Below, piece after piece: positions 2,051 to 42,700 of a stretch of DNA of 64,000 bases. Every line of letters starts with the position of its first letter. Position 1 is the first letter of the stretch. The stretch lies in NCBI GenBank assembly GCA_048013815.1, contig CM106586.1, forward strand, positions 7,750,001 through 7,814,000. The letters run 5' to 3'. The position numbers and the translations under genes are program-made. The notes below the pieces were generated by a model, which saw nothing but the letters and a program-made list of their open reading frames with translations, did not search any database and was not told where the DNA came from. The stretch comes from Setoptus koraiensis. Its lineage: Eukaryota > Animalia > Arthropoda.

Positions 2051-2154
2051 CAGCGCCCCAAAACAGCGCCCCAAAACAGCGCCCCAAAACAGCGCCCCCA
2101 AAACAGGGCCCCAACAGCAGCGCCCCCACAGCAGCGCCCCACATAGACACACAG

Positions 2155-2188
<34 letters not shown>
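2051..2188 (+). repeat. Tandem 13-mer (CAGCGCCCCAAAA) array followed by a (GA)n microsatellite
   Basis: Direct inspection. Confidence 0.85.
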
Positions 2189-2192
<4 letters not shown>

Positions 2193-4320: not shown

Positions 4321-4402
4321 GGCCGACTTTGGGCCGACTTTGGGCCGACTCTGGGCCGACTCTGGGCCGACTCTGGGCCGACTCTGGGCCGACTCTGGGC
4401 CG
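4321..4402 (+). repeat. Tandem 11-mer (GGCCGACTYTG) x7
   Basis: Direct inspection. Confidence 0.95.
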
Positions 4403-6334: not shown

Positions 6335-6400
6335 CCGCGTGCAGTTTTATCCGCAGTCCGCGTGCAGTTTTATCCGCAGTCCGCGTGCAGTTTTATCCGC
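6335..6400 (+). repeat. Tandem 23-mer (CCGCGTGCAGTTTTATCCGCAGT) x~3
   Basis: Direct inspection. Confidence 0.95.
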
Positions 6401-9400: not shown

Positions 9401-9835
9401 ATTCTTTTTTGTATTTGTGTTTCGTCAGAAACACACACACACATCGAGATTACTGACAATCGATTGTGCGCTGCGGCTGTGGCCCCCCAATAATGGGGCC
9501 CTGCCGCATAATGGCGCCACGAGCGAGCGGATCCCGCGCAAGTAGCGAGTCGCAACGGGCTGTGGGGCCCCTCGCAATAACGCAGTTGCCTGATTGACTT
9601 TGTGATGGGGCCAGCTGACAACAATCGGTGCGCGGGCGAGCTCGGCCAATCGACTCGTGGGGCGCCCCCGCTAGCACGCCTCATATTTACACTGGCCGCA
9701 TATCGGCGCATATCGCCACATTGAGCCGCATTTAGCCGCATTCAGCCGCATGTCGGCGCATATATCGCCGGTTGCGCGATGCTGCGATCTGGCCAGATTC
9801 TCAGTTTTCCCGGAATCGGCAGCGGCAGCGGCAGC

Positions 9836-9868
<33 letters not shown>

Positions 9869-12717: not shown

Positions 12718-12872
12718 ACAGCAACCACCACGAGCTCGCCAACAACAACAGCAACAACAACAGCAACAACAACAGCAACAACAACAGCAACGACGACGAC
12801 GACAGCGCCAGCAACGACAACAGCGACAACAACGACAACAACAACAACGGCAACAAGGACAGCGACAACGTC
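12718..12872 (+). repeat. Degenerate (CAA/CAG/CGA)n trinucleotide tract, apparently non-coding
   Basis: Low-complexity run; similar tracts at 4555-4630, 4810-4977, 11515-11555 and 11790-11950. Confidence 0.85.
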
Positions 12873-15467: not shown

Positions 15468-16284
15468 CTTTCGCATAGGCGCATCGCCCACGAGGCTATC
15501 ATCCAAATGGACACCATGAACACCATCAATACTGTGCCGGGGCAAATGGTCATCAGTGTCTTGAGGACAAATTTTGTATCAAATGATATTCTGTTTAGGG
15601 CGCCTATTGAGCGCGAGCTGGCATCTGTGAACAATTTTGAATGTAACAACATAACGCGACAAATTAAATATAAACGCAAAAACATTGGCAACGACAATAC
15701 AACATCCAATGGCACTGTTGACGACACTAAGCGGCCGCCGTGATTGTTTAATTTTGTTGTCCATAAAAAATATTCCTCTATCGGTATGGGATGTATGAGA
15801 CAAACAAACAATTCTAACAATATCTGGCCAACTCTGTTGATGTTCATGGCAATACGCCAATCGTCAGCACAATTATCAATCATAAACAATTGTATCTCTA
15901 ACGCGTGATAGGCACATATTAACGCTAACAACAGCACCGTTGAACAGCTAATTATTGTTTTAATACTCAAACTATAGGTGGAGCTTTTTGTATAAATGCC
16001 CGCAGCTGATAATTCATTCTCTATAACCATTAATATAATACCTAATATGGCAAACAACAGCGCATAATCGCTAATGCGCTTCCGCTTCTCAAACAGCGCC
16101 TTCCGTCGGCCAAGCCGGTAACCAACGTTGGGCCGGTGATAATTGGCCGCCAGTGTCGAGTTGTTGGCCCCGTTGTTTTGGCACGACAAACCGCCAATGC
16201 CCGGCGCCACGCTCGTGGTGGCCGCCAGACTCAGGCCCGCACCAATGGACCCGATGCGGATGGGATAATTGCGGTAATTGTTCA

Positions 16285-16327
<43 letters not shown>

Positions 16328-17135
16328 GCTGTTGTTGTTGTTGTTGTTGTTGCTTTGGCTATTGTTGCTGTCGGCCGTTGTTTGCGCGGTGTCGCCGTTG
16401 TGCGGATGAATTTGAATAATGTCGTCCTCATTTTGACTCATCATCATCGACATGTCGCAGCCCGGCGGCAGCTCGCCCGCGCCGCTCACCGGCGTATCAG
16501 CAGTCGGCAGCGGCCCCGAATGATGCCGACAGGTGTACGGTGCCGACGAGCCCGCCTCTAGCGGCGAGCCCCTGCTGCTAACAAGCGCAACCAATTGGCT
16601 AGACTGTGGCTGCTGCTGACCGGACTTGAACAGATACTTCCGGCTCGCCGCTGTCTGCTCCAAAATGGACGGCTCTCCGGTGTGTTCGTTGTTGTCGGCG
16701 GCCATGTTGTTGCTGTCGTCGTTGTCGTACTCGCTGTCGTGGCGTGACATAATCCTATCAATTTGCTGCTGCTGCTGCTGCTGTTCTAAACTGTCATCGC
16801 TGGCCACTATTACGGGCCTCGCCGGGCCGGCCGCTGCCGGCTTTGTTGCGTCTTCCTTTTTTAGCTTATCGGCGGCGCCATCAGCCACGAGCATCGGCGC
16901 GCCCGAGCCGCCGGGCGCCGCATTATCCGGGCCGGGGCCAAACTTTTTGCCACTTTGTAGCCATTGCTGTTGCTGCTGCGTGGCCTTCTTATCTTGAGTG
17001 GATTTTGTTGTATCTGGCGGCGCGGGCGCATTTGAATAGCAGCGGCAATCGTCGGACTCGGCGTTGCTCGGGGCCAGCGGTTGTTCACTTGTAGTTGCTG
17101 TTGTCGCGTTATGATCGCTGGCCCCACTGGCGGGG

Positions 17136-17176
<41 letters not shown>

Positions 17177-17588
17177 GCTGTTGTCGTAACAAGATAAACT
17201 CGATGTAAATCTGATCACAGACGACGAATTGTCTTGTCTCGCTGGCTTGCGGCCGGCGTTCAGCTGCGGCAGTTGTTGCGGATGTTGTTGCTGTTGTTGC
17301 TGCTGTTGTTGCTGCTGTTGTTGCTGCTGTTGTTGCTGCTGTTGATTAAGTGCGGAGCTGCTGGGCGCTATCGATGATGATGATTGATTAGCCATCGCGT
17401 GATCGGCATTATGTTTCGCCGTCTTACCTCGCTGCTTGCCGTTGGCCTGGTTGTTGCTGTTGTTGTCGCTATGGTCCCCGTAATGCACGCCGCACTCCGG
17501 CGCGGCGCCACCGTGACCTAGGGCCGTTTGCGGCGCCACACAATCAAAGTGGCTGCCGTTGTCGTAACTAACGGTACCTGTGACACTG

Positions 17589-17620
<32 letters not shown>

Positions 17621-19699
17621 TTGTTGTTGTTGTTGCTGCTGCTGTTGTTGCTGCTGTTGTTGCTGTTGCTGGTAGTGTCGCGACGACGACGGCTGCCGGT
17701 ACTGCTCGTCCCCCATGCCGACTGCTACATTTTGCTGCTGCTGTTGTTGTTGTTGTTGTTGTTGCTCGCCCAATTGCGACTGACTGCCCGCCAGCGCAAT
17801 CTTGCTCGCGGGCCCCAAATTAGCCGCTTGCTGCTTGGCATTTGCATTGGCCGGCGCTGCGTTGGGGCCGCCGCCACCGCCGCACGCCGCTGTTTGGTTT
17901 GGCTGTGAGCCGGCAGCGAGCAGATTTGTTTTATTCATGATACCCAGCGAGGATAATTTGAGATTATCGAAGAGCTCGCTCTCTATTCTTTTCATCATGG
18001 TGTTCACGCTGCTCACATTTGCTATATCAATCATGGTCGATGATCTCGTCTTGCCCGCCATGGCGCTCGCCGCCGCCGGTGATGCATTAAATTGGGGCCT
18101 GGTTGTTGTCGGTGTTGTTGTTGCTGTTGTCGCGCTATCTGTTGTTGTGATGCCGCCGCCGCCACCGCCGCTATTAACGGATAACATGGTGTCGTCGCCA
18201 ACGCTGAGATTGCTGGTTAGCTGGTGCTGGTGCTGGTGGCATCTAACGGCGGACAGGGGGCGACTCGCCAACGGTTGCGGTTGCTGCGGCTGATAATGTT
18301 GTTGGCTGGTGACGTGAGCGGCGGCGCTATTTAAATTTGATGAATTCATCATTGTCGGATGTTGTTGCTGATAATGATGATGCAATTCGGTGTGTGTCTG
18401 CGAATTCAGCGGCGGCCTCTGCGCCGCCACCGACCGGCAATCGTCGCCCACTCGTTGATTAAATGGTGCCCGCTGGGGGGGACCCCTATCGGCGCTGGCG
18501 CCCAGAGAATAATTGCTGCCGCTGGTGATGCTCCTCAACGAGGACGGCATAGGCTGTTGTTGTCTAGACACTGACGGTTGCTCGTTTTTGAAAGCGATTA
18601 TCTGCTGGAGATGGTGCTGCTGCTGTTGCTGGTGCTGGTGCTGGTGTAATTGTGATTGTAGTTGTAATTGTTGTTGTTCACTGTTGTGCTGGCAATTTGG
18701 TGATTGTTCGCAATAGCATCTATTATTATTATCATCTATTAATAGTGGCGCTAAACTAGATGGAGATAACGAGGCAGATTTTATCAATTTGTTGTTGTTG
18801 TTGTTGCTGGTGTTGGTGTTGTTGTTGCTGGCGCTGTTGTTGTTTGCGCTGTTGTTGTTGTTGGCGCTGTTGTTTTGCCTACTAATTGCATCATCGTTGT
18901 TATCTGTGATTAAATATCTGTGTGCGTACTCTCTAGCTGGCTGCTGCTGCCCGAGCAAATCAAGTGTGTCGTTGTCATCGTAACCAATTAGACCGCACGT
19001 GTGGACAACGGTCTGGCCGGCCGCTGGGGCCCCCACTGGCGACGGGCTCCGTTTGAGCGCCGGCGTGCTGCTCGACGTGCATGCCGGCCCCGACGAGGGG
19101 CCCGGCGCGTCTTGGCTGTAGGAGAAGATTTTCCCGGCCAGCCTGCAGTGCTGCTGGCTGAGATTGCTTCTGAACAGGTGCCTGCTTTGTTTCTGATGTT
19201 GTTGTTGTTGCTGCTGCTGTTGTTGTTGTTGCTGTTGTTGTTGTTGCTGTTGTTGTTGCTGCTGTTGTTGCTGCTGTTGAGCAGATTGATGAGGCTGACA
19301 AGACTGGACTGTTGTTGCCTGGTGATAATGTTGCAGGTCTGCTGGCGCCCCCGACGCATTAGCGGTTGCAGTTGTTTGTTGTGCAGTTATCTCACTGGAT
19401 CGGCCAGAGCTGGCGGGGCCCGCCGCCGCCGCCGATAATACATTGGCGCTGCTTCGTTGTTGCTGCTGCTTCTGATGATGATGATGGTGATACAATTGTT
19501 GTTGTTGTTGCTGCTGCTGCTGGTGCGGCAGAGGGGGCGCCGAGGGTGTCGTCGGGCCAGGTGAGGCGCCCGACGACGCCTGCTGCTGGGCCGCGGCCGG
19601 CTGCTGATAGAGCTGCTTCAAATGCGAAAATGGCAATAGGGCGCCCCCTTTTATCTTGAGTGAATCCGCGGCTATGTCGGCTATGTCCTTGTCGGCCAT
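15468..19699 (-). CDS. SK: Small-conductance Ca2+-activated K+ channel, first coding exon (N-terminus plus S1-S5); gene incomplete in window
   Basis: ORF C-terminus [28 protein letters not shown]...LIHPIP...[32 protein letters not shown]...[15 protein letters not shown]...SWAMRLCER is the SK/KCNN signature. The ORF ends at a canonical donor AG|GTGAGT (exon ends 15468, phase 2). Pore and CaM-binding exons were not recognised in 1-15467. Confidence 0.95.
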
Positions 19700-21239
19700 G
19701 TTTGTTTGGGCGCTAGTGCTGTTTGTGTTGTGGTGCCAGGTAATTGTTATATAATGTATGCTTGTTGTCGTATATTTGGGTGCGTTTGTGTGTGTATAAT
19801 TTGTTAATAAGTTTTTAATAGCAAATCTATTTTATCCTCTGTGGTGTTCTGTCATGTGATTTAGTCATAATTTAGCACAATGTAAATTGTTACACTGCCG
19901 GGGCCCCGTAGCCGTGCATAATTTTGGCCACAAAGCCAGCTCGACAGTGTCTAATGCTATCGTGCGGGTGTAGTGCGCGAATATTTTGTGCCGCTGTTTA
20001 GCGGGCGGCGCTAATGGCGCTAATGAGCCCGATCAAGCGGCCCGATAATAATCCGGCGGCTGCCAACCGACTTTGCCAACCAACTGTAATGAGCCAAATT
20101 AGGTGGCGGTGGGCGTTGCGGGCAGCGCGGATGTGGCGGATGTAGCGGGTACGGTGTGTGTCGTGTGTGTCGTCCAGTTGGCCGTTGTTGTCTGCAAAAA
20201 ACAATTTCCTTTCTTCCGAATCATTGCTCAACTTGTTTGCACACTCTTGCACAACAACAACAACAACAACAACAACTGTGTATCACCAATGATTTGGCCC
20301 AGTTGCAGCGGTTGCGTAATTTGCCACGACAAACAATACTGCTGCGAATGAGTTGTCACATTTCATCATGTATCAATGCTGCTATTTGTGTCGTAATGCT
20401 ATTGCGATTCTATTGGGTGCTGGCGGCGATTCTCGGGGGCCTCATAAGATAACACTGAGAGATAAGGGCGCGTTGTAAACTATTGCGTCGTAATAAGTTG
20501 CAAAAGTAAATTCATTAGGCACTGGTCTGATTTGATTTCATTTCGTGTAAGCTTGTTGTTGGCGTTGTGTGTGTATTTGAATGGGGCTCGTTCGAGTGCT
20601 CGTCAGTGGCGAGCAATCTGATTTGTTTTCTCTAAACTCACTGGTTGGTTTTTTCTGTTTCTGAACAATGTGTGTGCACAATCCAATAACTGCAGGCTGT
20701 GGCCAGACCGGTGTGTGTCGTAGGTGTGTGTGTGTTGTGTCTATCACTATAGCATCAATACAACGTATAATATAATATAACGTATGAGATATAAAGTGTG
20801 TGATATATAAAGTGTGTGTGATATATAAAGTGGCCTCTCTCGCCCGCTGCCAGAAACACAAACCGGAAATGGGGCCCAACACCAAAAAACACACTGTGCA
20901 CAGTGCACAGTTTGCGAGCAGCAGTGTGTGTTGGCCAGCGGCGGCGGCGGCGGCTTGGCTAGCGGTGGCGCAGTTGTGATGGCGCCGGTAATGGCATTAA
21001 CAGTGCGGGCTGGCGGATCAATTTAATTAATCTAATAATGTAATATATGGCTTATTCAAAATAATATTAGCAGCAGTAGTGTACGTGTTGGTGGCAGCGG
21101 CCTGCGTATTGGGCGCCAGTAACAATAGTAACTGCAATCACCTTTCGCAACCAATAAATCACCACTGATTTTTTGTTTCGCGCGCCTCCCCACAATGCAT
21201 AATGTGCCTATTTGTTGTGCGACAACTTGTGACGACCCA

Positions 21240-24643: not shown

Positions 24644-26287
24644 TTAGAATTTCAAATTCTTTTTGTTTTTCATCATGTGAGAGTCTAGAGAAGACCAGAA
24701 CTTAAGAAAATTTGCTTTATCCAAATGTCTTTTGCTTCGTGATAATTGTATCACTTGAACGTTCCATTTAGCAACATTGGGGTCCAAATTCATGTCATCA
24801 AATTTTAAATGGTAGGCCTTAATTCTGGAGAAAATCTCTACAGGCGATCCTCCCCAAGGCCATCCTTTAAATTGCCAACTCGGTCCTTGAACAAATACAG
24901 CAACCACTCTATTCCAATCATCAGCGTCCAGTTTTATTGGATTATCTATTACTCTATAGGCTGAGGTGGTAGCGTCAGGTTTTTTTCTTTGAATAAGTAT
25001 TTCAGAGTCACGCTTGTTATCAGCTTTAACTTCAACAAATCTGAGATCTTGAAGAATCGCCTGAGCATTATACATGTTGATGAGCGATGTTGTTGTTGCT
25101 GGTATTATAATGATTGGAACACGCGATTGTCGTCTTTTATTGGCAGAGTTGCTAGAAGTTGAATGGTGGCCAGGTGCGCTCATTACATGACCTCTATTGT
25201 TGGACGGGACATTTGAGAAGGAGTTGATTCCAGATGGAGGTCCAGGAGGCTTATGAGATAGTCCATTAGAACCGTTAACGACTGGTTGAACCAGCGCCGC
25301 ACCTGAGCCGTGGTAAGTCAGGCGAGTATCGATATCGAAACCAAGGGTGGCATCACTAGGGTTTGCAAATCTCTCTTGATCATAACGACTATATTGTGCT
25401 GTCTGGGTGGAGGGAGGCTGCTTCATTATAGGGGCCTCGATGGGCGATTGATTGGTGGTTGCGGTAGTCTTTTTAAATGAGGCATCGTCCATTTTTGCGA
25501 TAGCTTGTATGAGAGGTAAGACTGATTTTGCGAAATTTTTTGAGTGAGCTTGTAACATTGAAGATCTAGTTCGCCAAATCTTTTCTTTCTTCTTAATATC
25601 TTCCATTAACCTTTGATCATATTCTATCAAAAGTGCTGCCTCTTTTGCAGCGCTGGAATCTTTTTGAGATGTGCCTGATTTACCAACCAATCCGATCTCT
25701 GTGTCTGCGTCTATGATCGTACTTCTCTTTTTAGCTAACCTCTTGCCACGGATTTCGGCAAGTTTGTCAGGTCCCAACTCGGCTATAGCTAGCTCATTAG
25801 CAGATGTTGACGCAGCTAGTTCTGGTTTTTTCAACTTCGGTTCATCTAAGCTAGCTGCAAATCTATCAAGTAAACGTTTGTAGTCTTGATTAGGACGTTG
25901 AAGGTTCGTCGATCTATTATCACCGGACTCTTGTTGTATAGAGGTCGACGCGGGTATTGGAGCGTTTCTGTCTATGTTCGATGAGGTATTGTTTTCTCCC
26001 GTGAGATAGGACAGAAGATCCTTTCTGTCGGGCCTGTGTACGGCGGGTACATTATCTTGAGCCGCCTTCTTGACATAGAAATGATGTGACAAGCCTTGAT
26101 TCTTTAAGAAATATAAAAGACATTCCAAAGTGTAATATTCTTTGTTTGTTTTTGACTGGCAGATTTGATAGTTCGTCTTTACATTTTTTGGCCAACCGTT
26201 TTCGCCGAATATAATAAATCCGTTCGTCTCTTTTATTTCCCTTTTATTAACGTGGAATTGACGCAATTGGGAAAGTGGGTCCGCCAT
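24644..26287 (-). CDS. CDC73: Parafibromin / cell division cycle 73 (PAF1 complex), intronless, 547 aa
   Basis: N-terminus MADPLSQLR...WPKNVKTNY...YYTLECLLYFLK and C-terminal domain SRVPIIIIP...LQDLRFV...YRVIDNP...WNRVVAVFVQGPSWQFKGWPW. Confidence 0.97.
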   Translation of the reverse strand: MADPLSQLRQFHVNKREIKETNGFIIFGENGWPKNVKTNYQICQSKTNKEYYTLECLLYFLKNQGLSHHFYVKKAAQDNVPAVHRPDRKDLLSYLTGENNTSSNIDRNAPIPASTSIQQESGDNRSTNLQRPNQDYKRLLDRFAASLDEPKLKKPELAASTSANELAIAELGPDKLAEIRGKRLAKKRSTIIDADTEIGLVGKSGTSQKDSSAAKEAALLIEYDQRLMEDIKKKEKIWRTRSSMLQAHSKNFAKSVLPLIQAIAKMDDASFKKTTATTNQSPIEAPIMKQPPSTQTAQYSRYDQERFANPSDATLGFDIDTRLTYHGSGAALVQPVVNGSNGLSHKPPGPPSGINSFSNVPSNNRGHVMSAPGHHSTSSNSANKRRQSRVPIIIIPATTTSLINMYNAQAILQDLRFVEVKADNKRDSEILIQRKKPDATTSAYRVIDNPIKLDADDWNRVVAVFVQGPSWQFKGWPWGGSPVEIFSRIKAYHLKFDDMNLDPNVAKWNVQVIQLSRSKRHLDKANFLKFWSSLDSHMMKNKKNLKF

Positions 26288-26852
26288 AGCTGATGTCTAA
26301 TAGTTGATTTAAAACCCACACAAGAGTGTATTGTCGGTGAAAACTGGATCTTTGATACAAATGCTAAAGTTGATAAGATTCTTTAAATTACACGGTGTAA
26401 AATAATTTTATAAGATTATTGTTATTGGAATAACAAAATCGAATTCAGGAGAAAACTGATGTGTTTATGTGAGAGCGCAAAGAACAATGTGAAATACATG
26501 CACGGTAAACACGCCTCTAGATATGATCAGCGCAAGCTGCAGCTGTAATTTATAGCGCTAATTTTGAATCAACGAGTCTTTTTTGCTTTGGCCATTATTC
26601 CTGCTCTTCTATGCAAAGCCTCAATCTTGGGCTTGAGCCAAGATCAAATCACAATATGGAATATGGAGCAATCACGATAGAGATTTCATTTTTTACAACA
26701 TCATCGAATCAACTCCTTACATGATAATAATTTATTTTGATACACACTTATTTTGAATACTTTAGTGCCACAAATCATATTTTTCAATCCAATTATCAGC
26801 AAGATTGAACTAGTGAATACTTCCAAACAATCTAGACGTTTATCAAAAAATT
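26288..26852. promoter_or_regulatory. Putative bidirectional promoter between CDC73 and EPRS
   Basis: 565-bp AT-rich spacer between two divergent start codons; inferred from gene geometry only. Confidence 0.55.
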
Positions 26853-29800
26853 ATGTCTTCTGCTGTCTACACAGATCTTCCCGGTGCCGTCGATGGACAA
26901 GTAGTTGTACGATTTCCGCCGGAGGCCAGTGGATTCCTGCACATTGGACATGCTAAAGCTGCTCTATTAAATTATCACTACAAAACAATCTACAATGGAA
27001 AGCTTGTTATGAGATTCGACGATACAAATCCAGCAAAAGAAAATGTAGACTATGAGGAGGCCATATTGAACGATCTCAAGTCTCTTGGTGTGGAATATGA
27101 TCATTTTTCTTACACATCGGATCATTTTGATCTCATGTTGGAGAAATGTGACGAGATGATCAAAGCCGGCCTTGCCTATGTCGATGATACACCCGGCGAT
27201 CAGATGAAAATTGAGCGAGAGAAAAAAATTGAGTCGAAGAATCGTAATAACTCCGTTGAGAAGAATCTTGGACTATGGGAGGAGATGAAGAAAGGCTCCG
27301 AAACAGGACAAAAGTGCTGTGTCAGGGCCAAACTGGACATGGCCTCGCCCAATGGCTGCCTGAGAGATCCAACTATGTACCGATGCAAAGATGAAAGCCA
27401 TCCCCGAACTGGGAAAAAATACAAGGTCTACCCGACTTACGATTTCGCATGTCCAATCGTAGATAGTATAGAAGGTATAACTCATGCCCTCAGAACGACT
27501 GAGTACCTTGATCGAGACCCTCAATACTACTGGTTCATTGATGCTTTGAAATTAAGAAAACCTCACATAGCTTCATACTCGCGCCTGAATATGATGAACA
27601 CTGTTCTATCCAAAAGAAAATTAACATGGATAGTAGATCAAAATTTTGTCTCGGGATGGAATGATCCCAGAATGCCAACAGTTCAAGGAATCCTCAGAAG
27701 AGGTCTGACCGTGGAGGGACTGAAACAATTCATTATAGCTCAAGGGTCATCTCGATCTGTTGTGTTTATGGAATGGGACAAGATTTGGGCATTCAATAAA
27801 AAAGTCATCGATCCCATTGTACCGAGATACTCGGCAGTTGAAAAGAAAGATTCTGTCCCTGTTATTCTGAGCAACAACGAGGCAGGCTTAGATATTGAGA
27901 TAGCTCTGCACCCAAAGAATAGTGCCATGGGAGTTCGCAAACTGAACATTAAAAAAGAGCTTATAATTGAACAAGCCGACGCAAAAACTTTAGAAAACGG
28001 AATTGTTGCTACTTTCATTGGGCTTGGTAACGTAATCATCGAAGAAGTATCAAAGAACGATTCTGGTTTAGTAACTTCTATCAAGGCTTCCTTGAATTTA
28101 GATAACAAAGATTTCAAAAAGACCCCAAAAATCTGTTGGTTAGAGAAAGAGTCTTGCATTGAAGCTCAATTAATATACTATGACCACTTGATAACAAAGC
28201 CAGTGCTAGGTAAAGACGAAGATTTCAAGGAATTTGTGAACAAGGATAGTAAGCACGTAACTGAAGTTTTGACAGATGCAGATATCTCAGCTCTGAAACA
28301 AAGAGAGATCATCCAGTATCAAAGAAAAGGATATTTTATATGCGACCAATCATACTCTGAAAATGTAAAAACCATTATTTTGAATTACATACCAGATGGT
28401 ACTACGAAGCAACCTACAATGTCCGCGACCGACACAGTCAAACAAGCCCCCAAGACAGCACCCGTTGATGGAGACAAAGCTAAAGATTCAAAGAAGAAGG
28501 CGAAAGCAGAGGCCAAGGCAGAAGCAAAGTCAAAGAAGCAAGAGAAAAAGGAACCCCAAAAAACTCCCGGAAACGCTAATCAAGCCTCGTCCGAGCAATC
28601 AGGAAAAAAGCAGACCAAGCTTGGTATAGAATCAAAGAAAGAAACGAATTTCGCCAACTGGTACACTGAAGTAATAACTCGTGGTGAAATGGTAGAATAT
28701 TATGATGTGAGTGGTTGTTATATATTCCGCCCGTGGTCCTATGCAATTTGGGAAAACATCCAGAAATTCTTCGATGATAAGATCAAGTCGATTGGAGTTG
28801 AGAATTGCTACTTCCCAATGTTCGTTTCTTCAACTGCTTTAGAGAAAGAAAAAAATCACATAGCAGACTTCGCCCCTGAAGTGGCCTGGGTAACGAAATC
28901 TGGCCAATCTGATTTGAAAGAGCCCATAGCCATCAGACCAACTTCAGAAACAGTCATGTATCCTGCCTATGCTAAATGGGTCCAATCCCATCGAGATTTG
29001 CCAATACGTCTTAACCAGTGGAACAACGTCGTAAGATGGGAGTTCAAAAATCCTACACCTTTTATCAGAACAAGGGAGTTTTTGTGGCAAGAGGGTCATA
29101 CTGCATTTGCCACCAAACAAGAAGCTGTGGAAGAAGTAGAACAGATACTTGAATTTTATGCTCAAGTTTATGAGGACCTTCTGGCCATTCCGGTTGTTCG
29201 AGGCAGAAAGTCTGAGAAGGAAAAGTTTCCTGGCGCTGACTTTACCTTAACTGTTGAGGGATACATTGGTGTGAGTGGAAGGGGTATTCAAGGGGCCACT
29301 TCTCATCACCTAGGTCAGAACTTTTCAAAGATGTTTGGCATAAGCTTTCAAGCTCCAGAGGATCCATCCAAGAAAGAATTCGCCTATCAGAATTCATGGG
29401 GTCTATCAACAAGAACTATTGGGGTTCTAATAATGACTCATAGTGACAATAAAGGCCTTGTTCTACCACCAAAAGTAGCGCCACTTCAAGTCGTAATCAT
29501 ACCGTGTGGTATCACTGTATCCACATCTGAGACAGACAAACTTAAGTTATTAGATCAATGCAAGAGTCTAGAAACGGAATTGAAAGCTGCGAAAATAAGA
29601 TGTAAGATAGACTCATCGGAGCACGTTTCGCCTGGCTGGAAATTTAATCATTACGAGTTGAAGGGAGTGCCAATAAGAATTGAGCTTGGTCCAAAGGATT
29701 TAGAGAAGAATCAGTGCGTTGCATGCAGACGGGATGCCACAAAAGATAAGGGAAAAGAAGTTTATCCATTGGAGAACATTTCAGACAGCATAACAAAATT

Positions 29801-30137
29801 ATTGAATAAGATCCAAATCTCATTATACGATCAAGCATTGTCAGTGATGGAGCAAATGAGATATCAGACTTGTGATTGGCAGGAATTTCTAAACAAACTC
29901 AATGATAAATGTACTCTGCTTGCACCTTTTTGCGGAAGCCCATCTTGTGAAGATAATATCAAAAAGGATAGTGCGAGGGAAGACGTTGAGGATGCCTCCG
30001 GTCCTCTTATGGGCGCCAAATCATTATGCATACCTAAAAAACAACCGGAACCAGCAATCAATGAGACTCACAAGTGCATACATCCAAAATGTGAAGGGAA
30101 GCCGCAGTTTTGGTGTCTTTTTGGACGCAGCTATTGA
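26853..30137 (+). CDS. EPRS: Bifunctional glutamyl-prolyl-tRNA synthetase, intronless, lacking GST-like and WHEP domains, 1094 aa
   Basis: GluRS: [33 protein letters not shown], ending IPDG at 28400. ProRS: [47 protein letters not shown]-terminal LFGRSY. In-frame TGA at 26814-26816 upstream of the ATG. Confidence 0.97.
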
Positions 30138-34950: not shown

Positions 34951-36240
34951 TTATATTGGTGTGGTGTGGTGTGTGTGTGTGTGTGTGTGTATTCGTGTGT
35001 GTTCGTGTGTAGCAGTACGGCGCGGTGGTGACGGCAATAGAGATAGACAGGGCTACTGCTGCTGCTTGTGCCAATAATACTGATGATGATGATGATCTAG
35101 TAATGGTGATAATAATACTAATAGGATTGGCGGCGATTGGTGGCGTCCCAACAGTGTAGCGAAATAGAGTAGGATAGTAATAATGGATGATACAGTGTGG
35201 TAGTGGGATCAATTATTATTGTTATTACTATTGTGGTGGCGAATATTATATAGTAAGTATATAGTGCAGTATATAAGTCTAGCATAAGATTGTTTGAGTA
35301 AATTCAAAATGAAAAATAGTTATAATAATAATACTGCTGGTGCTGCCTATTCTTCATATGCCGTGCGCGATAATGCACTGCGCTATACTGCCGTGTGTGT
35401 GCTGTATGCAGCATAACAGTGCGCTATTTGCCAAGTTTGCCCAACAGTTGACAGGCCGTCGTCGGGGCGGCGCTGCTCGGCCGTCCGCGACCATGGGCGG
35501 CAGTTGATTTTGGGGAGTAGCTGTCTGCAGGGTCGGCTGACAACTGACTTGTGAGGGGAGCCCGCGTACGCCCAATGTTTTTGTCTGCGTCAATGTCGAG
35601 CACTGCACTGCAGTGCACACACAATCAAAAAAGGGAAACATTTACGTGGACGATGCGCGCCTTGGGCGTGCATTCTTGGCCGACCGCAGCGCCCCTGGCG
35701 ACCCCGGCTGGCGTGTCAAACGGGCAAAGGGCGCGCGCTGGCTCTGTTAGCGACTGGCTGCAGTAGCGACGCTACTAGCATTAGTGCTGCTGCTGCTGCT
35801 GTAGTGATGGCAATGGTTGCTTGCCCCTTTTTCTCGTCGATGTTGCATTGCCGACTCCAGTGTGTCTGCACTGCACACTGCATTGTGTGCTACTCACTAG
35901 CAGTTAGTGTGTGTGTGTGTGTGTGTTGTGACAGCTACAATAGTAGCTAGCCAGCGAACTATTCTCTGGCCTGCCCCCCCCCTCGCCCCCTCCCTGCCCA
36001 TCAAGCGAATGCAGCAGCAGCACAGCACAGTATGGTGCAGTGACGGGGAAAGAGCGGGGCAAAGCGGGGCTCTCACCAGTGCGGCTCCCCCTCGCTTGTG
36101 AGTCTCGTTACGACACTCTCGTAGCGTCTGTCTGTGCGTGTGTGTGTGTGTGTGCGTTCGTCCACTATGCGCCACTGGCTGGCAAACGGCAGAAAGCGCG
36201 GCAACACGCACACTCAATACGCACACACACACACACACAC

Positions 36241-36340
36241 ACGTAACGTACGTAACGTACGTAATGCATTACGTAATGTACGTTGCAACGTACGTAATGA
36301 TGTAATAGGCACGCACGCACGCACGCTCGCACGTCAGTTG
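36241..36340 (+). promoter_or_regulatory. Candidate colmedin promoter: bZIP-type ACGT palindrome cluster followed by initiator TCAGTT (36334-36339)
   Basis: Perfect palindromes TACGTAATGCATTACGTA and GTACGTTGCAACGTAC, then a match to the arthropod Inr consensus TCAKTY ~450 bp upstream of the ATG. Confidence 0.4.
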
Positions 36341-36620
36341 TCAGTGAGCGCGCACCAAATCAACTGCTGCCAACGTTGACGTAGCCGCAGCGAGCAAGAC
36401 GACGCTGGCGAGACGCACCAACTGTGCATAGCACTCAACTAGTGTCGCGCGCAAATGTGCCGACAGTGCGATTGTGCCGACAGTGCGAGTGTGCCGACAG
36501 TGCGAGTGTGCCAACTGCAAATTGCGCCAATTGCGCCTTCCGCCTTCTTACACCGTCTTTGCAACAGTCTACACCAGTGTGCACCAGTGTACGTGAAGCG
36601 CAAATGTAAAACTGTACGTG

Positions 36621-36697
36621 CCAAATAGAGCCGCCGCACGCAAAATAGAGCCGCCGCACGCAAAATAGAGCCGCCGCATGCAAATAGAGCGGCGCAG
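36621..36697 (+). repeat. Tandem 20-mer (CAAAATAGAGCCGCCGCACG) x3.5
   Basis: Direct inspection; lies in the predicted colmedin 5' UTR. Confidence 0.9.
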
Positions 36698-36787
36698 TCA
36701 AGCCAGCGAGCCGCAAACGGAAGCACACGAAACTTTTGTTCGCAAGCGTCAATCTGCGCGCCGTGTCGCCGAGCCAGCGCCGGCCCG

Positions 36788-39700
36788 ATGCAGCCAGCAA
36801 GCAAGCCAACGACGATCGCCGCCGCCCCCACTCACTGTGGGCAGCGGCGCAAATTAACCATGCCAACAATTGATTGGTCATCGTCGTCGATAACGCTAAT
36901 TACCTGCTTTGTGTTGATATTGTGCAACATCATCTACAGTTACACCAGCAACTACAAATATGAGTCAAGTTTCGAGCGAGTGCAGCGAGAGTTGCAGTGG
37001 CTCAGGCGCACAGTTGTCGCGCTCGATTCGCGACTGTCACTCGGGCCGCCAGTTCACGACACTGTCAGCGCCAACAACAACAGCACACACAAACTAGTGA
37101 CAAACAACAACGACAACAACGACAACAACGACAACAACAGTTTTGAAAATAATCGCTTCGTTCGCTCCATATCGTTTGATGCGCCTGACAAGTCGCAAAC
37201 GTTGCCCGCTGCCAGCGAACAGCCGGCCGGCAACAGCAACAATTACATTAACAGCAACGATCAACCGCTTATCAACTACGACACGGCTGCCTCCAATCAT
37301 TACAGTGCCGCCTACAACACGATATACGGCAACAGCCACGACAACAGCGCAACAGTGTCGCAAACTGTCGACACCAACGCGCCGCAGTCTAGCCACCAAT
37401 TCAATTCACAATTGACACAATTGTCACAATTGTCACAATTGTCGGCCAGTCAAAACAGTCGCAGGCTGGCCAATTTGGCCGGCTTGCACGAGCTATACAG
37501 AGAGGTGTTTTCAACGTCGTCGTCGTCGTCGCCAGAAGCGCAGAGCAACTCGCAAACAAGCGACAACAACGACAACGAGCACAACATTTTGGCGAGCTCG
37601 ATCGGAAGTGCAGCTCGTCATGACGACAAGAGCAGACATTTTCTGGCAATGGAACAGTCGATTAAATCAAAGGTAAGCTCCAACGCCATTGATCGCATTA
37701 ACATGCGCCCGGCGCAACCAATTGTCAGGCCAACTTCTAGTTATGTAACTGCCCCGTTTCTTCAACATGTTCCACATATCTCATATCTCGCATGGCAGGA
37801 CTTTATCTGGTTCAACGACAACATTCGCATACCCGTAAGTATCTGTTTCGCTGCAATCCAGCCAAACAAAGTTTGCAATCCAGAGAAACTGTGCATGCAT
37901 GTATCTACGCACCATCACGGCAACTGTTCGAGTTTAATCTCCATTGTGCTCACAATGTTAAATATAGTTTGCGACATAAACACACAGTTGGTTGTTGTTG
38001 TTGTTGTTGCAAATCCGCCATTTGTCAGCTGCGCCAGACAACACACACACCAGGCTCACCTGAGCAACGATTGTTATGCAACGATGCGGCCATGTTACGT
38101 AACAATACGTACGTGTAATCTCATGCGCCGCCGCCGCCGAGACGAGATTACATCATCGCTTGTTGAGTTTATGTTTGGCCTTACCAATTTGTTAGTGCGC
38201 GCCAGCCAACAAGCAACATCTGCTAATAATTGTAACCTTTGGCGCGGCTCCATTCTTCTCGGCTTGACATTTCTCGTCTCGTTTCTTCGCCTGTAGGGGG
38301 TGTCTAGCGAGCGCTGTTGTACACTTACGCAACTTGTAAGTGAGCGGCGTGAAAATTCAAATTTTCCCTTTTCGCTGCCCTCTGCTTGCTTTTGTGTTCA
38401 AGCTTGCCACTCTATCATATGGCGTCTGGTCGTCGCATGACGACGACATTATCATAAAATGGATTTTGTTGTTGTTGTTTCAAATTGCTATAATAACAAC
38501 AATATTTGTTTTGTTTATCTTTTTCGCGCACACTCACACTTGTCAGTTATTACTGTAACATTACAGGACTGATTATTTATTGCGCAACATAAACAACAGC
38601 CACGTGAATATGTTTGAATGTGGTCGAACGCGCTTGGCAATACGGGGCCCCGTTGAGCTCTCCAGTGTGGCCAGTCGCTCCGGCCATCGGTCTATGGCCG
38701 GTTGTTGCTGGCCGATGCTGGCCTGAAATTCTTATCGGCGAGCCGCCAATAAGAATTTCAGGCACGTAGATGGCGCACGATGCGTCACGCCACGCAACGC
38801 GTGTATCATTTGGCTGGCATCAATGAGCAGACTGGTTTTAAGTTTGGCCCCATCGTGGGGCCCGCTGTCACTGTCGCCACTTACAATTGCGACAGTGCCG
38901 CGGGTTACGGTTGGTGCGCGGCCAGGGCGACGCAAGTGGCACGAGCACGAGTCACGTTTGCCACTCGTGCCAGCGAGTATTGGCTGTGAAATCACTCGAG
39001 TAGCTCACATAAATATTGATTAAAGTCCGGTTATTCCCCCCCCCCATTGGCCGTGGTGGCCGCGACAGTCGTTACGCGACGGTTTCGCGCTCACTCGTGG
39101 CGCCTCACTCGTCACGACGTAACGAGTATAGCGCCACGAGCCAGCTCGTGCGCCGCGTGCTCTTGGCAACGCGGCGCCACTGGTGGCTAGGTGCTGACTC
39201 GTGGCGCACTATTATTGTTATTGCCAATTGGACATGGCGCAAGCGACAATAATGATGATGATGACGACGACAGTGATAGTAGTTATAATAGTGGCGATGG
39301 TTGCTCGCTAACTCGCGCCTGTCTCGCGGTCCGCACCGGGGCGCCCCAACCGGCGGGCTTAGGCCCCGTGATCCGTCTCAAATAATAGATTGCCGTTTGA
39401 TTGTTTACTGCACACAACCGGCCGAGCCCCACCGAGCCCGGCTGATCCGCGCCGAACCGAGCCGCACCGAACCGAGCCGCACCGAACCGAGCCGCACCGA
39501 ACCGAGCCGCACCGAACCGAATTGAGCCACACCGAGCCGAGCCGAGCCAACTGAGTGACCACAGCCAGCACCGGTATGCATTGGAGTGATCCGCCACTCT
39601 GGCGGCCGTATCTATTAGCGGCGCTGCCATTGATGTCACTCTATTACCAGTTCCATTGTTGGATTTACTGGCCGGCCAACGTTGAGCTCACCATTAATCT

Positions 39701-42700
39701 TCGCGTCCCATTAGCTGGTCGCTGGCGAGCGATTCGGCGGCAGTCGGCGATTCGGCGATCCGGCGAGTTGGTGAGTCGGCGAGTTGGCGAGGCCCGGCCA
39801 ACGAGAACCAGAGAGCGAGAGAGAGCGAGAAGTAAAGAGCGAGAGGGCGCGCAAACGAGCAAACGAGGCCCCGCCAGACAGAGATGAATGGAGCCCCACG
39901 GAGTGGGAGCGCTCTATTTGCGCCACGGGCCCCAACTGAATAAACAAACAACAATGGCAACGTATCGCCGGGACACTGTTGTGCGGCATTGTTTTTGGGC
40001 GCCGTCGCTGGTCGTCTTTTTGTTTATATCGGCCGGGGAACAAAAACGTTGCATTGGCAATTGTTTTTGGCCCCGACATAAACGTTTGGCGTGCATAAGA
40101 ATGATTATTGAACCATTGCATTCACTTATCAAATCTAATAAACTCTGATGATCGAGTGGCGTGATCGGGCCTCCACGGCTCACTGGATCCGACGGGCCTC
40201 ATCGGGCGATAGTCGGGCGATAGTCGGACAATAGTCGGGCAACAGTCGGGCAATAGTCGGGCAATAGTCGGGCGATAGTCGAGTGGCGAGCACCAATCAA
40301 ATGTTGGCAGCCACCAAATTTGAACTAAATTTGAAAATTGTACGCCCGCCCTCAACATAATATATATTGAGTTAAGCACATTATACTCTACAACTGTCCA
40401 CAGTGTTCAACCGTCTATGGCATAATGCGAGTCAGACGGCGCTGTGTGGATTACGTAATGGAGCGTTGGTGTGAGAAAGGAATTAAATAGATCAATTGAC
40501 CTCTTGTCGTCGTTGCTTATTTACGGCAAGAGGCTCCCGACGCGGCGCTCCTACGACCATTTTGCTCTATCGTTGCCCACCGATCAGTGCTCAGCGGCAC
40601 AGCCATTTGCAGAGTGTCGTCGGCCGTTTCGCTGCAAATATCCGCCAGTCACTTATCCGCCAGCCAGTTTATATCGGCCAGTGTCACATTATCAGTCACT
40701 GGTGACCACCAAACCCACCCCGGCGAGCCGCCGCTATATCCGTACAGCACCGCTGCGGCCATATATGTAGCTGTGCGGCCAACGAGCCTTGTATGGATAT
40801 ATGCAACAATACAGGGATATGTCCGAGCGCAAGCTTCGATTCAGACCAGTGCTGGCGTGTCGGCTGGCGTGTCGGCCGGCGTGTCGGCCGGCGTGTCGCA
40901 GTATAGGCTGGCGTAGTATTTCTTGAGCGGTGCAGCTCCGACGTGAGCATAGCTCCGTCAGAGCGGCCCCAATGGCGAGTTGGGGCCGCCAGTGTAAATA
41001 ACTTGATTAGCAGTGTGAACGAGGAGGCCCGCGCTTTAATTTATCCCTTCGTTTAATTTATAGTCGACACACTATACATGATGTGACAACAACGACTGCA
41101 CCACTGCATGCTAACCATTTTGCAGCCTCCGCCACTCGGCGGGCCTCAGTCTTGCAAGCGCCGCATTGCTCAAATTAATTGGCTCAAGAGAATAGCACGC
41201 GCACGACGCCGACGACGACGCGACAAAAAACGCGAACCGGCGATATAAATTAACCAGAAACGGCCCCACCGACAGCTACTTGCCCCGGGCTAAAAGTTAA
41301 TTAACAACTTTGTTCTGGTCAACAACTCTGCGCTTTTTACATGTCCGTGGCTGCCCGGTTGCTGTATTTTGGGGCCCCATTTCGCCCACTCACCCACTCG
41401 CCAGCTAGCCGACGGCCGGCGCCCCACAAAATGCACGATTGTGCCGCCGTGTTTATTTTCTATCTGTCGGAACCATTCGAGATTATTATCACAGACATAA
41501 TAAATTACTGTTACCCTTTCGCCAACTTTTCCTGGCGCACCAAGGGGCAAAGTTGTCGCGTTAAATGGCCCTCACTCCGCTGCACTTGTTAACTGTCGTC
41601 TACTTCATTTGGCCAGCTTGCAAGCTGCCCAGACAAACGAAGAAGCCAAACGAAGTTGGCTTGTGCAGCAAATTAGCGGGCCCCCGAACAAACAATCGCG
41701 CCCATTGTTGACTAAACTATCGTCGGACCTTGTTGTATGCAGCGTGGGGGGCGCTTTTTTACCCGATAATAATAAACCGAAAAACATACAAAAATAACAC
41801 ACAACAATAACACAACCACATTGTTAGCTGTTTATGGTATCGGCACATCATTATCGTAGGCCAGATCATGTTTCTGTCCGCTGGTGTGTCGACACAATGT
41901 GGCCTGTCCATTGTTGAAATATAGATGATCGTGTTGGGCCCGAAATGTTGTTTTCGAGCCATGAACAGTTTCATTTTGACCCCTTTCATTTCATTATTAT
42001 TATTTCACATGGATAAAACGCAGAATTTCGTCAGCCAACCACACTCAACAACAATAAATCATTTGCCACAACCGCGGCCTCTGACACCGAGCAACCTCAA
42101 GCAGTGTGCTCGCCGTCACAATAATACTAACGGCAAAATATCTTGCTTCATATTTATACATCATCGTTTGTTTTTATGAATCTCGCACGAATTTCAATTT
42201 GCCCAAATTTTCATCAATTCACTGGCCGGCAGCCGGAAAAATGACGAAAATTCGGGCAAAGCTCGTGATGCACTGGTGTGATAAAAGTAGCGAACGTTGT
42301 TAACGATTTTTCCCATTCTTCTCTCATCACAACCGAAACAACCGTGCAAAAACATATCTGAACCGATATCCGATATTTCGCCACACATATGGCCCGGCAA
42401 ACGAAACGCACAGTTCTCGAATGTACAAAGATTTTGCTCAACAATTAAAAACTTCTGCCAGCGCAAACCAAAAGAAGCGTCTCCGCCGTCACTGAATCCT
42501 ACAAACGATATCACCTCAGCTACTGCAGCCGCCTTGTCTCCAGCCTCGTCGTTGTCGCCGGCCGCCGGTTCACCTGGCGGCAGCTCGCTGGGTGAACCAG
42601 CCGGTGACACATATTATGTCATTAACGGTTGGGGCATTCATCGCAAAATGAAACGAAGGCCACGAAGGCACAACCATCATCAATCGGATAGTAGCTTGTA

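What the first reader, a model, noticed from the sequence alone, without database searches (positions are those of the whole stretch)
26853..30137. Minimal EPRS: fusion retained, GST-like domain and all WHEP repeats missing
Seen: the protein starts ~18 aa before RFPPE with an in-frame stop 39 nt upstream. GluRS and ProRS are joined by a 68-aa Lys/Ala-rich linker (28401-28604) with no WHEP consensus. Known: animal EPRS uses the GST-like domain to dock into the multi-synthetase complex (AIMP2/AIMP3/MetRS), and WHEP repeats (3 in human, 6 in Drosophila) for non-canonical functions such as GAIT. Inference: this lineage may have dismantled or rewired the multi-synthetase complex, giving a natural test of why the fusion persists.
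Basis: partly seen in the sequence, partly recalled or inferred. Interest (0 to 1): 0.72.

Follow-up and report, generated by a model that had tools for sequence, protein, structure and literature searches.

The report
Stripped-down Glu-Pro tRNA synthetase fusion in mites
A tiny plant-feeding (eriophyoid) mite keeps the animal two-in-one enzyme that loads glutamate and proline onto tRNAs, but without the docking and RNA-binding add-ons other animals attach to it, and its other tRNA synthetases are trimmed the same way.

Summary
Window 26853-30137 (+) is one intronless 1094-aa ORF. It encodes a GluRS body, a 70-aa lysine-rich linker and a ProRS body, with no GST-like domain and no WHEP repeat.

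- **Host:** an eriophyoid mite. All 32 eriophyoid versions found have the same layout.
- **No hidden GST exon:** in six species the conserved start Met has an in-frame stop 12-81 nt upstream. No GST coding was found in the window or the genome.
- **No WHEP remnant:** sensitive HMM and profile-profile tests found none. The linker is predicted to be disordered, is always polybasic, and is under purifying selection.
- **Partly known already:** linked EPRS without WHEP was reported in 2014 for a fluke, a louse and an aphid. GST loss is not eriophyoid-specific; most acariform mites lack it in EPRS, and all those sampled lack it in MetRS.
- **New here:** all five add-ons reported as required for multi-synthetase complex assembly are missing from the ORFs found (EPRS GST, MetRS GST, ArgRS N-extension, LeuRS and IleRS C-extensions). 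AIMP2 and AIMP3 were not detected, but their absence is unproven. AIMP1 is retained.

The parts
26288..26852 (+). Intergenic region shared with the divergently transcribed CDC73 gene (24644-26287, minus strand). It presumably holds the promoter and 5' UTR. It contains the in-frame TGA at 26814-26816.
   Evidence: CDC73_N matches from residue 1, so the neighbour is complete; 8, 2 and 5 stops in the three frames within 300 nt upstream; no GST-like coding.
26853..26897 (+). Short N-terminal tail (aa 1-15) in place of the roughly 200-aa GST-like domain of other animals.
   Evidence: conserved from the Met in 15 eriophyoid orthologues; 19-38 aa precede RFPPE in all 32 eriophyoid rows.
26898..27812 (+). 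GluRS class I catalytic domain (aa 16-320), with HIGH at aa 30-33 and the LSKRK form of the KMSKS motif at aa 252-256.
   Evidence: (PF00749, E 7.6e-116), and invariant columns.
27822..28346 (+). GluRS anticodon-binding domains (aa 324-498).
   Evidence: PF03950, PF20974; pLDDT about 85-93.
28404..28613 (+). Linker (aa 518-587): a lysine-rich segment predicted to be disordered, with no WHEP.
   Evidence: no WHEP signal; the positive control passes. (pLDDT 26-33, no secondary structure). (60-114 aa, K 19-27%, net charge +8 to +15 in 32 orthologues). (dN/dS 0.037).
28614..30134 (+). ProRS body (aa 588-1094): class II core 686-860, anticodon-binding domain 879-980, C-terminal zinc-binding domain 1009-1094 with four invariant Cys.
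   Evidence: E 1e-214 to 2e-209 against solved ProRS domains; C1027, C1032, C1075, C1080 invariant.
30135..30137 (+). Stop codon TGA.

Best explanation
This is the functional, complete cytosolic glutamyl-prolyl-tRNA synthetase of an eriophyoid mite, in the most reduced form seen for this fusion in the sequences examined here.

Shown: a GluRS body and a ProRS body, both intact and under purifying selection, sit in one intronless ORF. They are joined by a 60-114-aa linker that is predicted to be disordered, is strongly polybasic, and is itself under constraint. The N-terminal GST-like docking domain and every WHEP repeat are gone in all 32 eriophyoid orthologues.

Inferred mechanism:
- The enzyme works as a free-standing ProRS-mediated dimer that charges tRNA-Glu and tRNA-Pro.
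- The lysine-rich tether keeps the two activities at 1:1 stoichiometry. It probably also supplies non-specific tRNA affinity, which WHEP repeats and other lysine-rich appendages give in other eukaryotes.
- It cannot dock into a canonical multi-synthetase complex through the GST tetramer (MetRS-AIMP3-EPRS-AIMP2), and it cannot carry out WHEP-dependent GAIT-type functions.

The loss looks stepwise and part of a lineage-wide stripping of synthetase appendages. MetRS GST was lost in the acariform ancestor. EPRS GST was lost in most acariform lineages. All EPRS and MetRS WHEPs, and the HisRS WHEP, are gone in eriophyoids. In this genome the ArgRS, LeuRS, IleRS and GlnRS extensions are missing too.
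For: - **ORF and domains:**
- **Host and conservation:** one search finds 31 homologues of 1078-1137 aa, none with GST or WHEP, including Fragariocoptes setiger and Aceria tosichella. In the tree they form a 100%-supported clade of 32 rows with the window, all with 19-38 aa before RFPPE and 0 WHEP.
- **Start codon:** the N-terminus is conserved from the Met. In six species an in-frame stop lies 12-81 nt upstream, in different gene neighbourhoods (CDC73 or Utp14 on the opposite strand, 100-720 bp away).
- **No GST coding:** 72 outgroup GST domains searched by tblastn against the window and three orthologous loci (L027-L029) gave a best E of 0.027. The genome search with the Dinothrombium GST domain gave a best E of 0.48, landing in PARP1.
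- **No WHEP remnant:** a custom HMM built from 337 WHEP repeats and run with --max scored at most 1.5 bits. hhalign of the linker profile against the WHEP profile gave probability 0.2%, against 85% for this genome's own GlyRS WHEP.
- **Structure:** the AlphaFold model has both bodies mostly at pLDDT 85-95 and the linker (519-586) at 26-33 with no helices.
- **Selection:** dN/dS is 0.041 (GluRS), 0.037 (linker) and 0.065 (ProRS) against the 92%-identical relative.
- **Rest of the genome:**
  - The only WHEP is in GlyRS.
  - MetRS is 685 aa with no GST and no WHEP.
  - HisRS has no WHEP.
  - ArgRS starts at its Arg_tRNA_synt_N domain.
  - LeuRS ends at about human residue 1059 of 1176.
  - IleRS ends at about human residue 1072 of 1263.
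  - GlnRS lacks its N-terminal domain.
  - AIMP2 models give no hit.
  - GST_C hits are only mu, delta and zeta GSTs.
- **Literature:** PMC4394549 names exactly these five appended domains as required for complex assembly.
Against: - There are no RNA data for the 5' end. No run on record is RNA, and the RNA-like contigs start 117 nt inside the CDS.
- Absence of AIMP2 and AIMP3 is not proven. The same six-frame GST_C search missed eEF1G, whose GST domain is split by an intron.
- The truncations of ArgRS, LeuRS, IleRS, GlnRS and HisRS rest on single ORFs in this genome. Unseen terminal exons are possible.
- AIMP1, a complex scaffold, is retained with an N-terminal coiled-coil-like helix, so some complex may persist.
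- tRNA binding by the linker is inferred from composition only.
- Dimerisation and activity are inferred from homology.
Confidence: 0.75

Rival explanations
1. The gene model is incomplete. An upstream exon encoding the GST-like domain is spliced onto the AG at 26835, so the real protein is longer.
For: The sequence has a TCTAG 18 nt before the ATG, with no stop between it and the ATG. The genome does have some introns, for example in eEF1G. No RNA read covers the 5' end.
Against: No GST-like coding lies anywhere in the 64-kb window, in the three orthologous loci searched (L027-L029) or in the genome. The upstream 565 bp is bounded by a complete divergent gene. In five other species the same Met has an in-frame stop 12-81 nt upstream, as close as 12 and 15 nt, within different neighbourhoods. 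Protein conservation begins at the Met. Other acariform mites, including RefSeq Tetranychus urticae, also start 13-83 aa before RFPPE.
Confidence: 0.04
2. The linker is a highly degenerate WHEP repeat, as described for Trichinella, and retains the WHEP fold and function.
For: It occupies the same position and is lysine-rich like WHEP repeats. Some orthologues have a 25-33-aa stretch free of Pro and Gly that could be helical.
Against: Pfam gives no hit at E<=1. The custom 337-repeat HMM with filters off scores at most 1.5 bits, and not in the linker. Profile-profile probability is 0.2%, against 85% for the control. AlphaFold predicts no helix and pLDDT 26-33. Length varies from 60 to 114 aa with no repeat periodicity.
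Confidence: 0.03
3. A multi-synthetase complex persists in rewired form, as in C. elegans. It would be built around the retained AIMP1 and new contacts, for example the polybasic tails or the synthetase cores. EPRS would then still be complex-bound without GST.
For: An AIMP1 orthologue is present with an N-terminal coiled-coil-like helix. LysRS, AspRS and GlnRS are reported to bind through their cores (PMC4394549). C. elegans shows that the complex can be re-architected (PMC4394549). AIMP2/3 absence is unproven.
Against: AIMP1's known partner, the ArgRS leucine-rich N-extension, is absent. All five assembly-required appendages are missing. Neither AIMP2 Pfam model gives a hit.
Confidence: 0.3
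4. The linker is only a passive spacer left by deletion of the WHEP array, and its lysine richness is compositional drift with no tRNA-binding role. The fusion persists simply because splitting it would need a new promoter and start codon.
For: Sequence conservation is low across the clade: majority-residue share is 0.61 against 0.84 in the bodies, and length varies from 60 to 114 aa. The genome is generally streamlined (PMC7738191).
Against: Composition is held in all 32 orthologues (K 19-27%, almost no Arg, net charge +8 to +15). dN/dS is 0.037, as low as in the catalytic bodies. No lineage has shortened the linker below 60 aa.
Confidence: 0.2

Closest known systems
Canonical animal EPRS1 (human, Drosophila): GST-like domain + GluRS + 3-6 WHEP + ProRS
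   Same: Same two catalytic bodies in the same order, 58-65% identical. The ProRS C-terminal zinc domain is the same. One polypeptide.
   Different: No GST-like domain, so no GST-tetramer docking to AIMP2 and AIMP3. No WHEP, so no GAIT-type RNA or protein binding and none of the mapped linker phosphosites. The linker is 70 aa and predicted disordered, against about 300 aa of helix-turn-helix repeats (PMC10618286).
Linked EPRS lacking WHEP in Schistosoma mansoni, Pediculus humanus and Acyrthosiphon pisum (Ray & Fox 2014, PMC4072531)
   Same: The fusion is kept and all WHEPs are lost, in a parasite or ectoparasite. This fits that paper's proposed link between WHEP loss and parasitism.
   Different: This is an independent loss in Acariformes, shared by a whole superfamily (32 sequences). 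Here the GST domain is gone too. The louse relative Polyplax keeps about 200 N-terminal residues with GST hits. A conserved polybasic disordered linker was not described there.
EPRS of other acariform mites (Tetranychus urticae, Panonychus, Halotydeus, Sarcoptes)
   Same: These are the nearest relatives. They also start 13-83 aa before RFPPE, with no GST domain.
   Different: They keep 1-5 WHEP repeats. Eriophyoids keep none. One unnamed relative (P0046) lost them independently.
Rewired multi-synthetase complex of Caenorhabditis elegans (PMC4394549)
   Same: MetRS without a GST domain, IleRS without C-terminal repeats, and no p18 homologue found. It shows that an animal lineage can rebuild or reduce the complex.
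   Different: C. elegans split EPRS and kept the GST domain on GluRS plus six WHEPs, and it fused a p43-like domain to MetRS. The mite keeps the fusion, drops GST and WHEP, and keeps a separate AIMP1.
Lysine-rich N-terminal tRNA-binding extensions of eukaryotic LysRS and AspRS (from my own knowledge of the family, not tested here)
   Same: Short polybasic appendages that raise non-specific tRNA affinity. The composition resembles the mite linker and the Lys-rich C-tail of the mite MetRS.
   Different: Those are terminal helices. This is an internal segment predicted to be disordered, and its tRNA binding is only inferred.

Membership tests
[quoted passage not shown] | Eukaryotic-type GluRS catalytic and anticodon-binding domains with HIGH and KMSKS-type motifs | tested here: met
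   (PF00749 E 7.6e-116, PF03950, PF20974). (HIGH at aa 30-33, LSKRK at aa 252-256). (E 1e-213 to a solved GluRS).
[quoted passage not shown] | Eukaryote/archaeal-type ProRS core, anticodon-binding domain and C-terminal zinc domain in the same polypeptide, downstream of GluRS | tested here: met
   (single ORF; E 2e-209 to the human EPRS ProRS domain). Four invariant Cys.
[quoted passage not shown] | Linker made of WHEP-TRS repeats | tested here: not met
   WHEP-less linked EPRS is nevertheless accepted as EPRS in PMC4072531.
[quoted passage not shown] | N-terminal GST-like domain | tested here: not met
Canonical metazoan multi-synthetase complex (MSC/MARS) | GST-like domains on EPRS and MetRS that form the tetramer with AIMP2 and AIMP3 | tested here: not met
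   EPRS. MetRS: the catalytic domain starts at aa 52 and there is no GST. Eriophyoid and other acariform MetRS orthologues lack PF18485 and PF00043.
Canonical metazoan multi-synthetase complex (MSC/MARS) | AIMP2 (p38) and AIMP3 (p18) genes present | tested here: inconclusive
   PF16780 gave a best E of 0.148 with a stop inside the match, and PF18569 gave nothing. GST_C, GST_C_3 and Arc1p_N_like hit only mu, delta and zeta GSTs and eEF1B-beta. The same search missed the intron-split GST of eEF1G, and no AIMP2 or AIMP3 seed sequence was available.
Canonical metazoan multi-synthetase complex (MSC/MARS) | Leucine-rich N-extension of ArgRS, and C-terminal extensions of LeuRS and IleRS | tested here: not met
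   ArgRS is 607 aa and Arg_tRNA_synt_N starts at aa 10. LeuRS is 975 aa and ends at about human residue 1059 of 1176. IleRS is 1090 aa and ends at about human residue 1072 of 1263. These are single-ORF models with no RNA support.
Canonical metazoan multi-synthetase complex (MSC/MARS) | AIMP1 (p43) present | tested here: met
   The 331-aa ORF L005:3491-4483 (minus strand) matches human AIMP1 at E 2e-67 and has tRNA_bind at aa 176-268.
Canonical metazoan multi-synthetase complex (MSC/MARS) | Physical co-purification of nine synthetase activities | not testable with these tools
   Needs biochemistry.
GAIT-type non-canonical EPRS function | Paired WHEP domains that bind the RNA element and NSAP1, and the linker phosphosites | tested here: not met
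   No WHEP. The linker is unrelated in sequence to the human linker described in PMC10618286.

The most novel reading that the evidence does not exclude
Eriophyoid mites, and in part most Acariformes, have no multi-synthetase complex at all. They would be the first animals known with free-standing cytosolic synthetases. Even so, the Glu-Pro fusion is kept across the whole superfamily, through a selected polybasic disordered tether. That would mean the fusion is maintained for reasons intrinsic to Glu/Pro charging, such as obligatory 1:1 co-expression or metabolic coupling, and not for complex docking or WHEP-based signalling.
Probability: 0.4. Interest if true: 0.7.

Novelty: new variant of a known kind. 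Interest (0 to 1): 0.52.

Why it matters
Why GluRS and ProRS are fused in animals is still an open question (PMC10618286). The proposed reasons are docking in the multi-synthetase complex, WHEP-mediated signalling, and metabolic co-regulation, and in model animals these cannot be separated.

In this lineage the first two have been removed by evolution while the fusion has been held across a deep radiation. That favours explanations intrinsic to the two activities.

It also suggests that the complex, described as conserved from Drosophila and Artemia to mammals (PMC4394549), is not universal in arthropods. The whole acariform mite lineage appears to have lost its GST hub.

On the practical side, this is a compact, intronless, 1094-aa EPRS that could be expressed to study the fusion without its appendages.

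Tried and rejected
**Searches for AIMP2, AIMP3 or a split-off GST domain that gave nothing useful**
- PF16780 (AIMP2) gave one hit at E 0.148 with a TAA inside it, which is chance level.
- The Dinothrombium EPRS GST domain, searched against the genome, hit only PARP1 at E 0.48.
- PF21972 hit eEF1B-beta, not AIMP3.
- GST_C and GST_C_3 hits were a mu GST, a zeta GST and three delta-type GST copies.
- I could not search with real AIMP2 or AIMP3 sequences. No tool supplied a seed, and I did not type any from memory.

**RNA evidence**
- No run on record is RNA.
- Runs X1 and X2 are DNA contigs spanning the intergenic DNA.
- Runs X4 and X5 cover only genic parts, with none at 26271-26898, and their last gene pieces end at 30204 and 30162. 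They show no joint inside the mite gene and look RNA-derived and unspliced. They do not reach the 5' end, so this is weak support only.
- The one joint reported (28709 to 29085, same length, diverged, depth 88-279) is another organism's ProRS matching conserved stretches, not a splice.

**Other**
- Two regex-based linker extractions failed on divergent orthologues. I replaced them with an alignment-based extraction.
- I did not use complex prediction, the large representative search, or the third word-index protein search. No claim here rests on them.
- No spliced model was needed, so no joined-exon step was run.
Full report
**What is there.** Window 26853-30137 (+) is a single ATG-initiated ORF of 1094 aa.
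- Pfam at E<=1 finds a complete eukaryotic-type GluRS: catalytic domain aa 16-320 and the two anticodon-binding domains aa 324-498.
- It also finds a complete ProRS: class II core aa 686-860, anticodon-binding domain aa 879-980 and C-terminal zinc domain aa 1009-1094.
- It finds no GST family and no WHEP-TRS.
- Solved structures match aa 6-516 (GluRS, E 1e-213) and aa 574-1094 (human EPRS ProRS domain, E 2e-209), and leave the stretch between them uncovered.

**Whose gene it is.** The word-index protein search returned one 92%-identical protein. It then returned about 30 proteins of 1078-1137 aa at 64-70% identity, all with the same six Pfam domains and none with WHEP or GST.
- The named ones are Fragariocoptes setiger and Aceria tosichella, so the window comes from an eriophyoid mite.
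- The genome is 48.8 Mb in two contigs.
- In a tree of 121 EPRS cores, the 32 eriophyoid rows form a 100%-supported clade. Every member has 19-38 residues before RFPPE and no WHEP repeat.

**Is an upstream GST exon hidden?** Five lines of evidence say no.
1. The upstream neighbour, 565 bp away on the other strand, is a complete CDC73 gene.
2. 72 GST-like N-termini from outgroup EPRS were searched by tblastn against the whole 64-kb window and three orthologous loci (L027-L029). They gave only scattered chance hits, best E 0.027.
3. The Dinothrombium EPRS GST domain and the Arc1p_N_like, GST_C and GST_C_3 models found no candidate anywhere in the genome.
4. In six species the conserved Met has an in-frame stop 12-81 nt upstream, with different upstream neighbours: CDC73 in two and Utp14 in two. 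In two species the stop lies only 12 and 15 nt away.
5. Protein conservation begins at that Met.

RNA evidence is weak. No run on record is RNA. Two runs behave like RNA-derived contigs: they cover genes only, show no joint within this gene, and end 25-67 nt past the stop. They begin 117 nt inside the CDS. I put the hidden-exon rival at about 4%.

**Is the linker a decayed WHEP?** I built an HMM from 337 WHEP repeats found in 85 outgroup EPRS.
- With all filters off, no eriophyoid EPRS scored above 1.5 bits, and nothing lay in the linker.
- Profile-profile comparison of the 32-sequence linker alignment with the WHEP alignment gave probability 0.2%. The N-terminus of this genome's own GlyRS gave 85% (E 6e-6) as a positive control.
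- An AlphaFold model built on 46 sequences folds both bodies, mostly at pLDDT 85-95. It leaves aa 519-586 at pLDDT 26-33 with no secondary structure.

So no WHEP remains, either by sequence or by predicted fold.

**What the linker is.** Across the 32 orthologues it is 60-114 aa long (median 82). It is 19-27% Lys with almost no Arg, and its net charge is +8 to +15. Its sequence is poorly conserved: the majority-residue share is 0.61, against 0.84 in the bodies.

Against the 92%-identical relative, its dN/dS is 0.037, as low as GluRS (0.041) and ProRS (0.065). It is therefore a constrained polybasic tether that is predicted to be disordered. That it also binds tRNA non-specifically is my inference, by analogy with lysine-rich synthetase appendages.

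**How the losses are distributed.**
- The 15 nearest non-eriophyoid rows are acariform mites; the named ones are Sarcoptes, Tetranychus, Panonychus, Halotydeus and Dinothrombium. All but Dinothrombium start 13-83 aa before RFPPE, so they lack GST. They keep 0-5 WHEPs.
- One unnamed relative (P0046) lost its WHEPs independently.
- Ticks, spiders, scorpions and horseshoe crabs keep about 205 N-terminal residues and 3-5 WHEPs.
- MetRS follows a related pattern:
  - Limulus keeps GST and WHEP. The spider MetRS are of similar length and keep WHEP, though no GST family is listed for them.
  - Six of the seven named non-eriophyoid acariforms have WHEP but no GST.
  - Eriophyoids and Brevipalpus have neither.
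- The likely order is as follows. MetRS GST was lost first, in the acariform stem. EPRS GST was then lost in most acariform lines. The WHEPs were lost last, in the eriophyoid stem.

**The rest of the complex in this genome.** Havrylenko and Mirande (PMC4394549) list five appended domains as required for assembly. They are the MetRS GST, the leucine-rich N-extension of ArgRS, the C-extensions of LeuRS and IleRS, and the GluProRS GST. All five are missing here.

| Component | What the genome shows |
|---|---|
| EPRS | No GST-like domain |
| MetRS | 685 aa; catalytic domain from aa 52; Lys-rich C-tail |
| ArgRS | 607 aa; begins at its Arg_tRNA_synt_N domain |
| LeuRS | 975 aa; ends at about human residue 1059 of 1176 |
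| IleRS | 1090 aa; ends at about human residue 1072 of 1263 |
| GlnRS | Lacks its N-terminal domain |
| HisRS | Lacks WHEP |
| GlyRS | Carries the only WHEP in the genome |
| AIMP2 | Both Pfam models give nothing |
| AIMP3 | No AIMP3-like GST found |
| AIMP1 | Clearly present, with its EMAPII domain and an N-terminal coiled-coil-like helix |

Two cautions apply.
- The six-frame GST search missed eEF1G, whose GST domain is split by an intron. AIMP2 and AIMP3 absence is therefore unproven.
- Apart from EPRS and MetRS, the truncations rest on single ORFs in one genome.

Earlier notes of this scan on a short AlaRS and an AsnRS without its N-extension point the same way. I did not check them.

**How it most likely works.**
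- *Shown:* two intact, selected catalytic bodies in one polypeptide, joined by a selected polybasic linker that is predicted to be disordered.
- *Inferred:*
  - It forms a free-standing ProRS-mediated dimer that charges both tRNAs.
  - The linker enforces 1:1 stoichiometry and adds general tRNA affinity.
  - It does not dock through a GST tetramer.
  - It has no WHEP-dependent functions.
  - Whether any residual complex forms around AIMP1 is open; I put that at about 30%.

**Comparison with what is known.** Ray and Fox (PMC4072531) already reported linked EPRS with no WHEP in Schistosoma mansoni, Pediculus humanus and the pea aphid, and proposed a link to parasitism. An obligate plant parasite with a streamlined genome (PMC7738191) fits that pattern.
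- The WHEP-less fusion alone is a new member of a known kind.
- The additions are the simultaneous absence of GST, conservation of this minimal form across a whole superfamily, the constrained polybasic linker, and the systematic absence of all assembly modules. The GST hub loss extends to Acariformes generally.
- I found no paper describing this.
- C. elegans is the only described animal precedent for a re-architected complex (PMC4394549). There the fusion was split and GST and WHEP were kept, which is the opposite outcome.

**Verdict.**
The domain evidence favours a dismantled or rewired complex. However, the WHEP loss has precedent, the GST loss is older and wider than this lineage, AIMP1 persists, and nothing is shown biochemically.
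- Novelty: a new variant of a known kind.
- Interest is moderate. It is a clean natural experiment on why the Glu-Pro fusion persists, and a hint that the multi-synthetase complex is not universal in arthropods.

Noticed in passing
L009:1348-3402 (+) = G000:C2 ~17.772 Mb, and L010:217-2271 (-) = G000:C1 ~2.612 Mb: Two MetRS genes on different chromosomes differ by 1 residue in 685. This is either a very recent duplication or an assembly artefact. The first 32 aa look like a mitochondrial presequence ahead of a second Met, which suggests dual targeting from one gene.
   Followed up: partly
L004:4402-6804 (+) = G000:C1 ~4.500 Mb: GlyRS (801 aa) carries the only WHEP domain detectable in the whole genome (aa 109-151). 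WHEP was therefore purged from EPRS, MetRS and HisRS but kept here.
   Followed up: partly
L005:3491-4483 (-) = G000:C1 ~0.261 Mb: The AIMP1 orthologue is retained although its usual partner, the ArgRS N-extension, is absent. The longest ORF adds 62 presequence-like residues ahead of a Met followed by a coiled-coil-like helix.
   Followed up: partly
L032:1366-3051 (+) = G000:C1 ~20.172 Mb: GlnRS is 562 aa and keeps only the last ~35 positions of the R2 region. The eukaryotic N-terminal domain (PF04558) is not found anywhere in the genome.
   Followed up: partly
window 26853-26897 and 26820-26852: Against the 92%-identical relative, the first 15 codons have synonymous divergence of 0.08, versus 0.46-0.65 in the rest of the gene. 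A short upstream motif (caaacaatctagac) is shared by the two. This may be a conserved initiation or leader element, but the sample is tiny.
   Followed up: no
P0046 and P0068 (homologues): Two other short EPRS lack WHEP and have a short N-terminus. One is an unnamed acariform relative (1141 aa), sister to a 1-WHEP form. The other is Polypedilum vanderplanki (1115 aa), whose midge relatives have 5-6 WHEPs. The second may be an annotation artefact.
   Followed up: no
L022 = G000:C2:7516905-7520219: eEF1G has its GST_C domain split by an intron, and the six-frame Pfam search missed it. This is a useful warning for any absence claim in this genome.
   Followed up: yes
window 28683-29127, runs X4 and X5: A 2186-nt contig at 9-24 times the depth of the mite contigs matches only two short conserved ProRS stretches. 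It is another organism's ProRS in the same samples, probably the host.
   Followed up: no
window 1-13000, 16000-20000 and 36000-42000: G+C swings between 0.38 and 0.61 in blocks of a few kb. The block at 16-20 kb, which holds a 1411-aa minus-strand ORF, has an AT skew of about -0.36.
   Followed up: no
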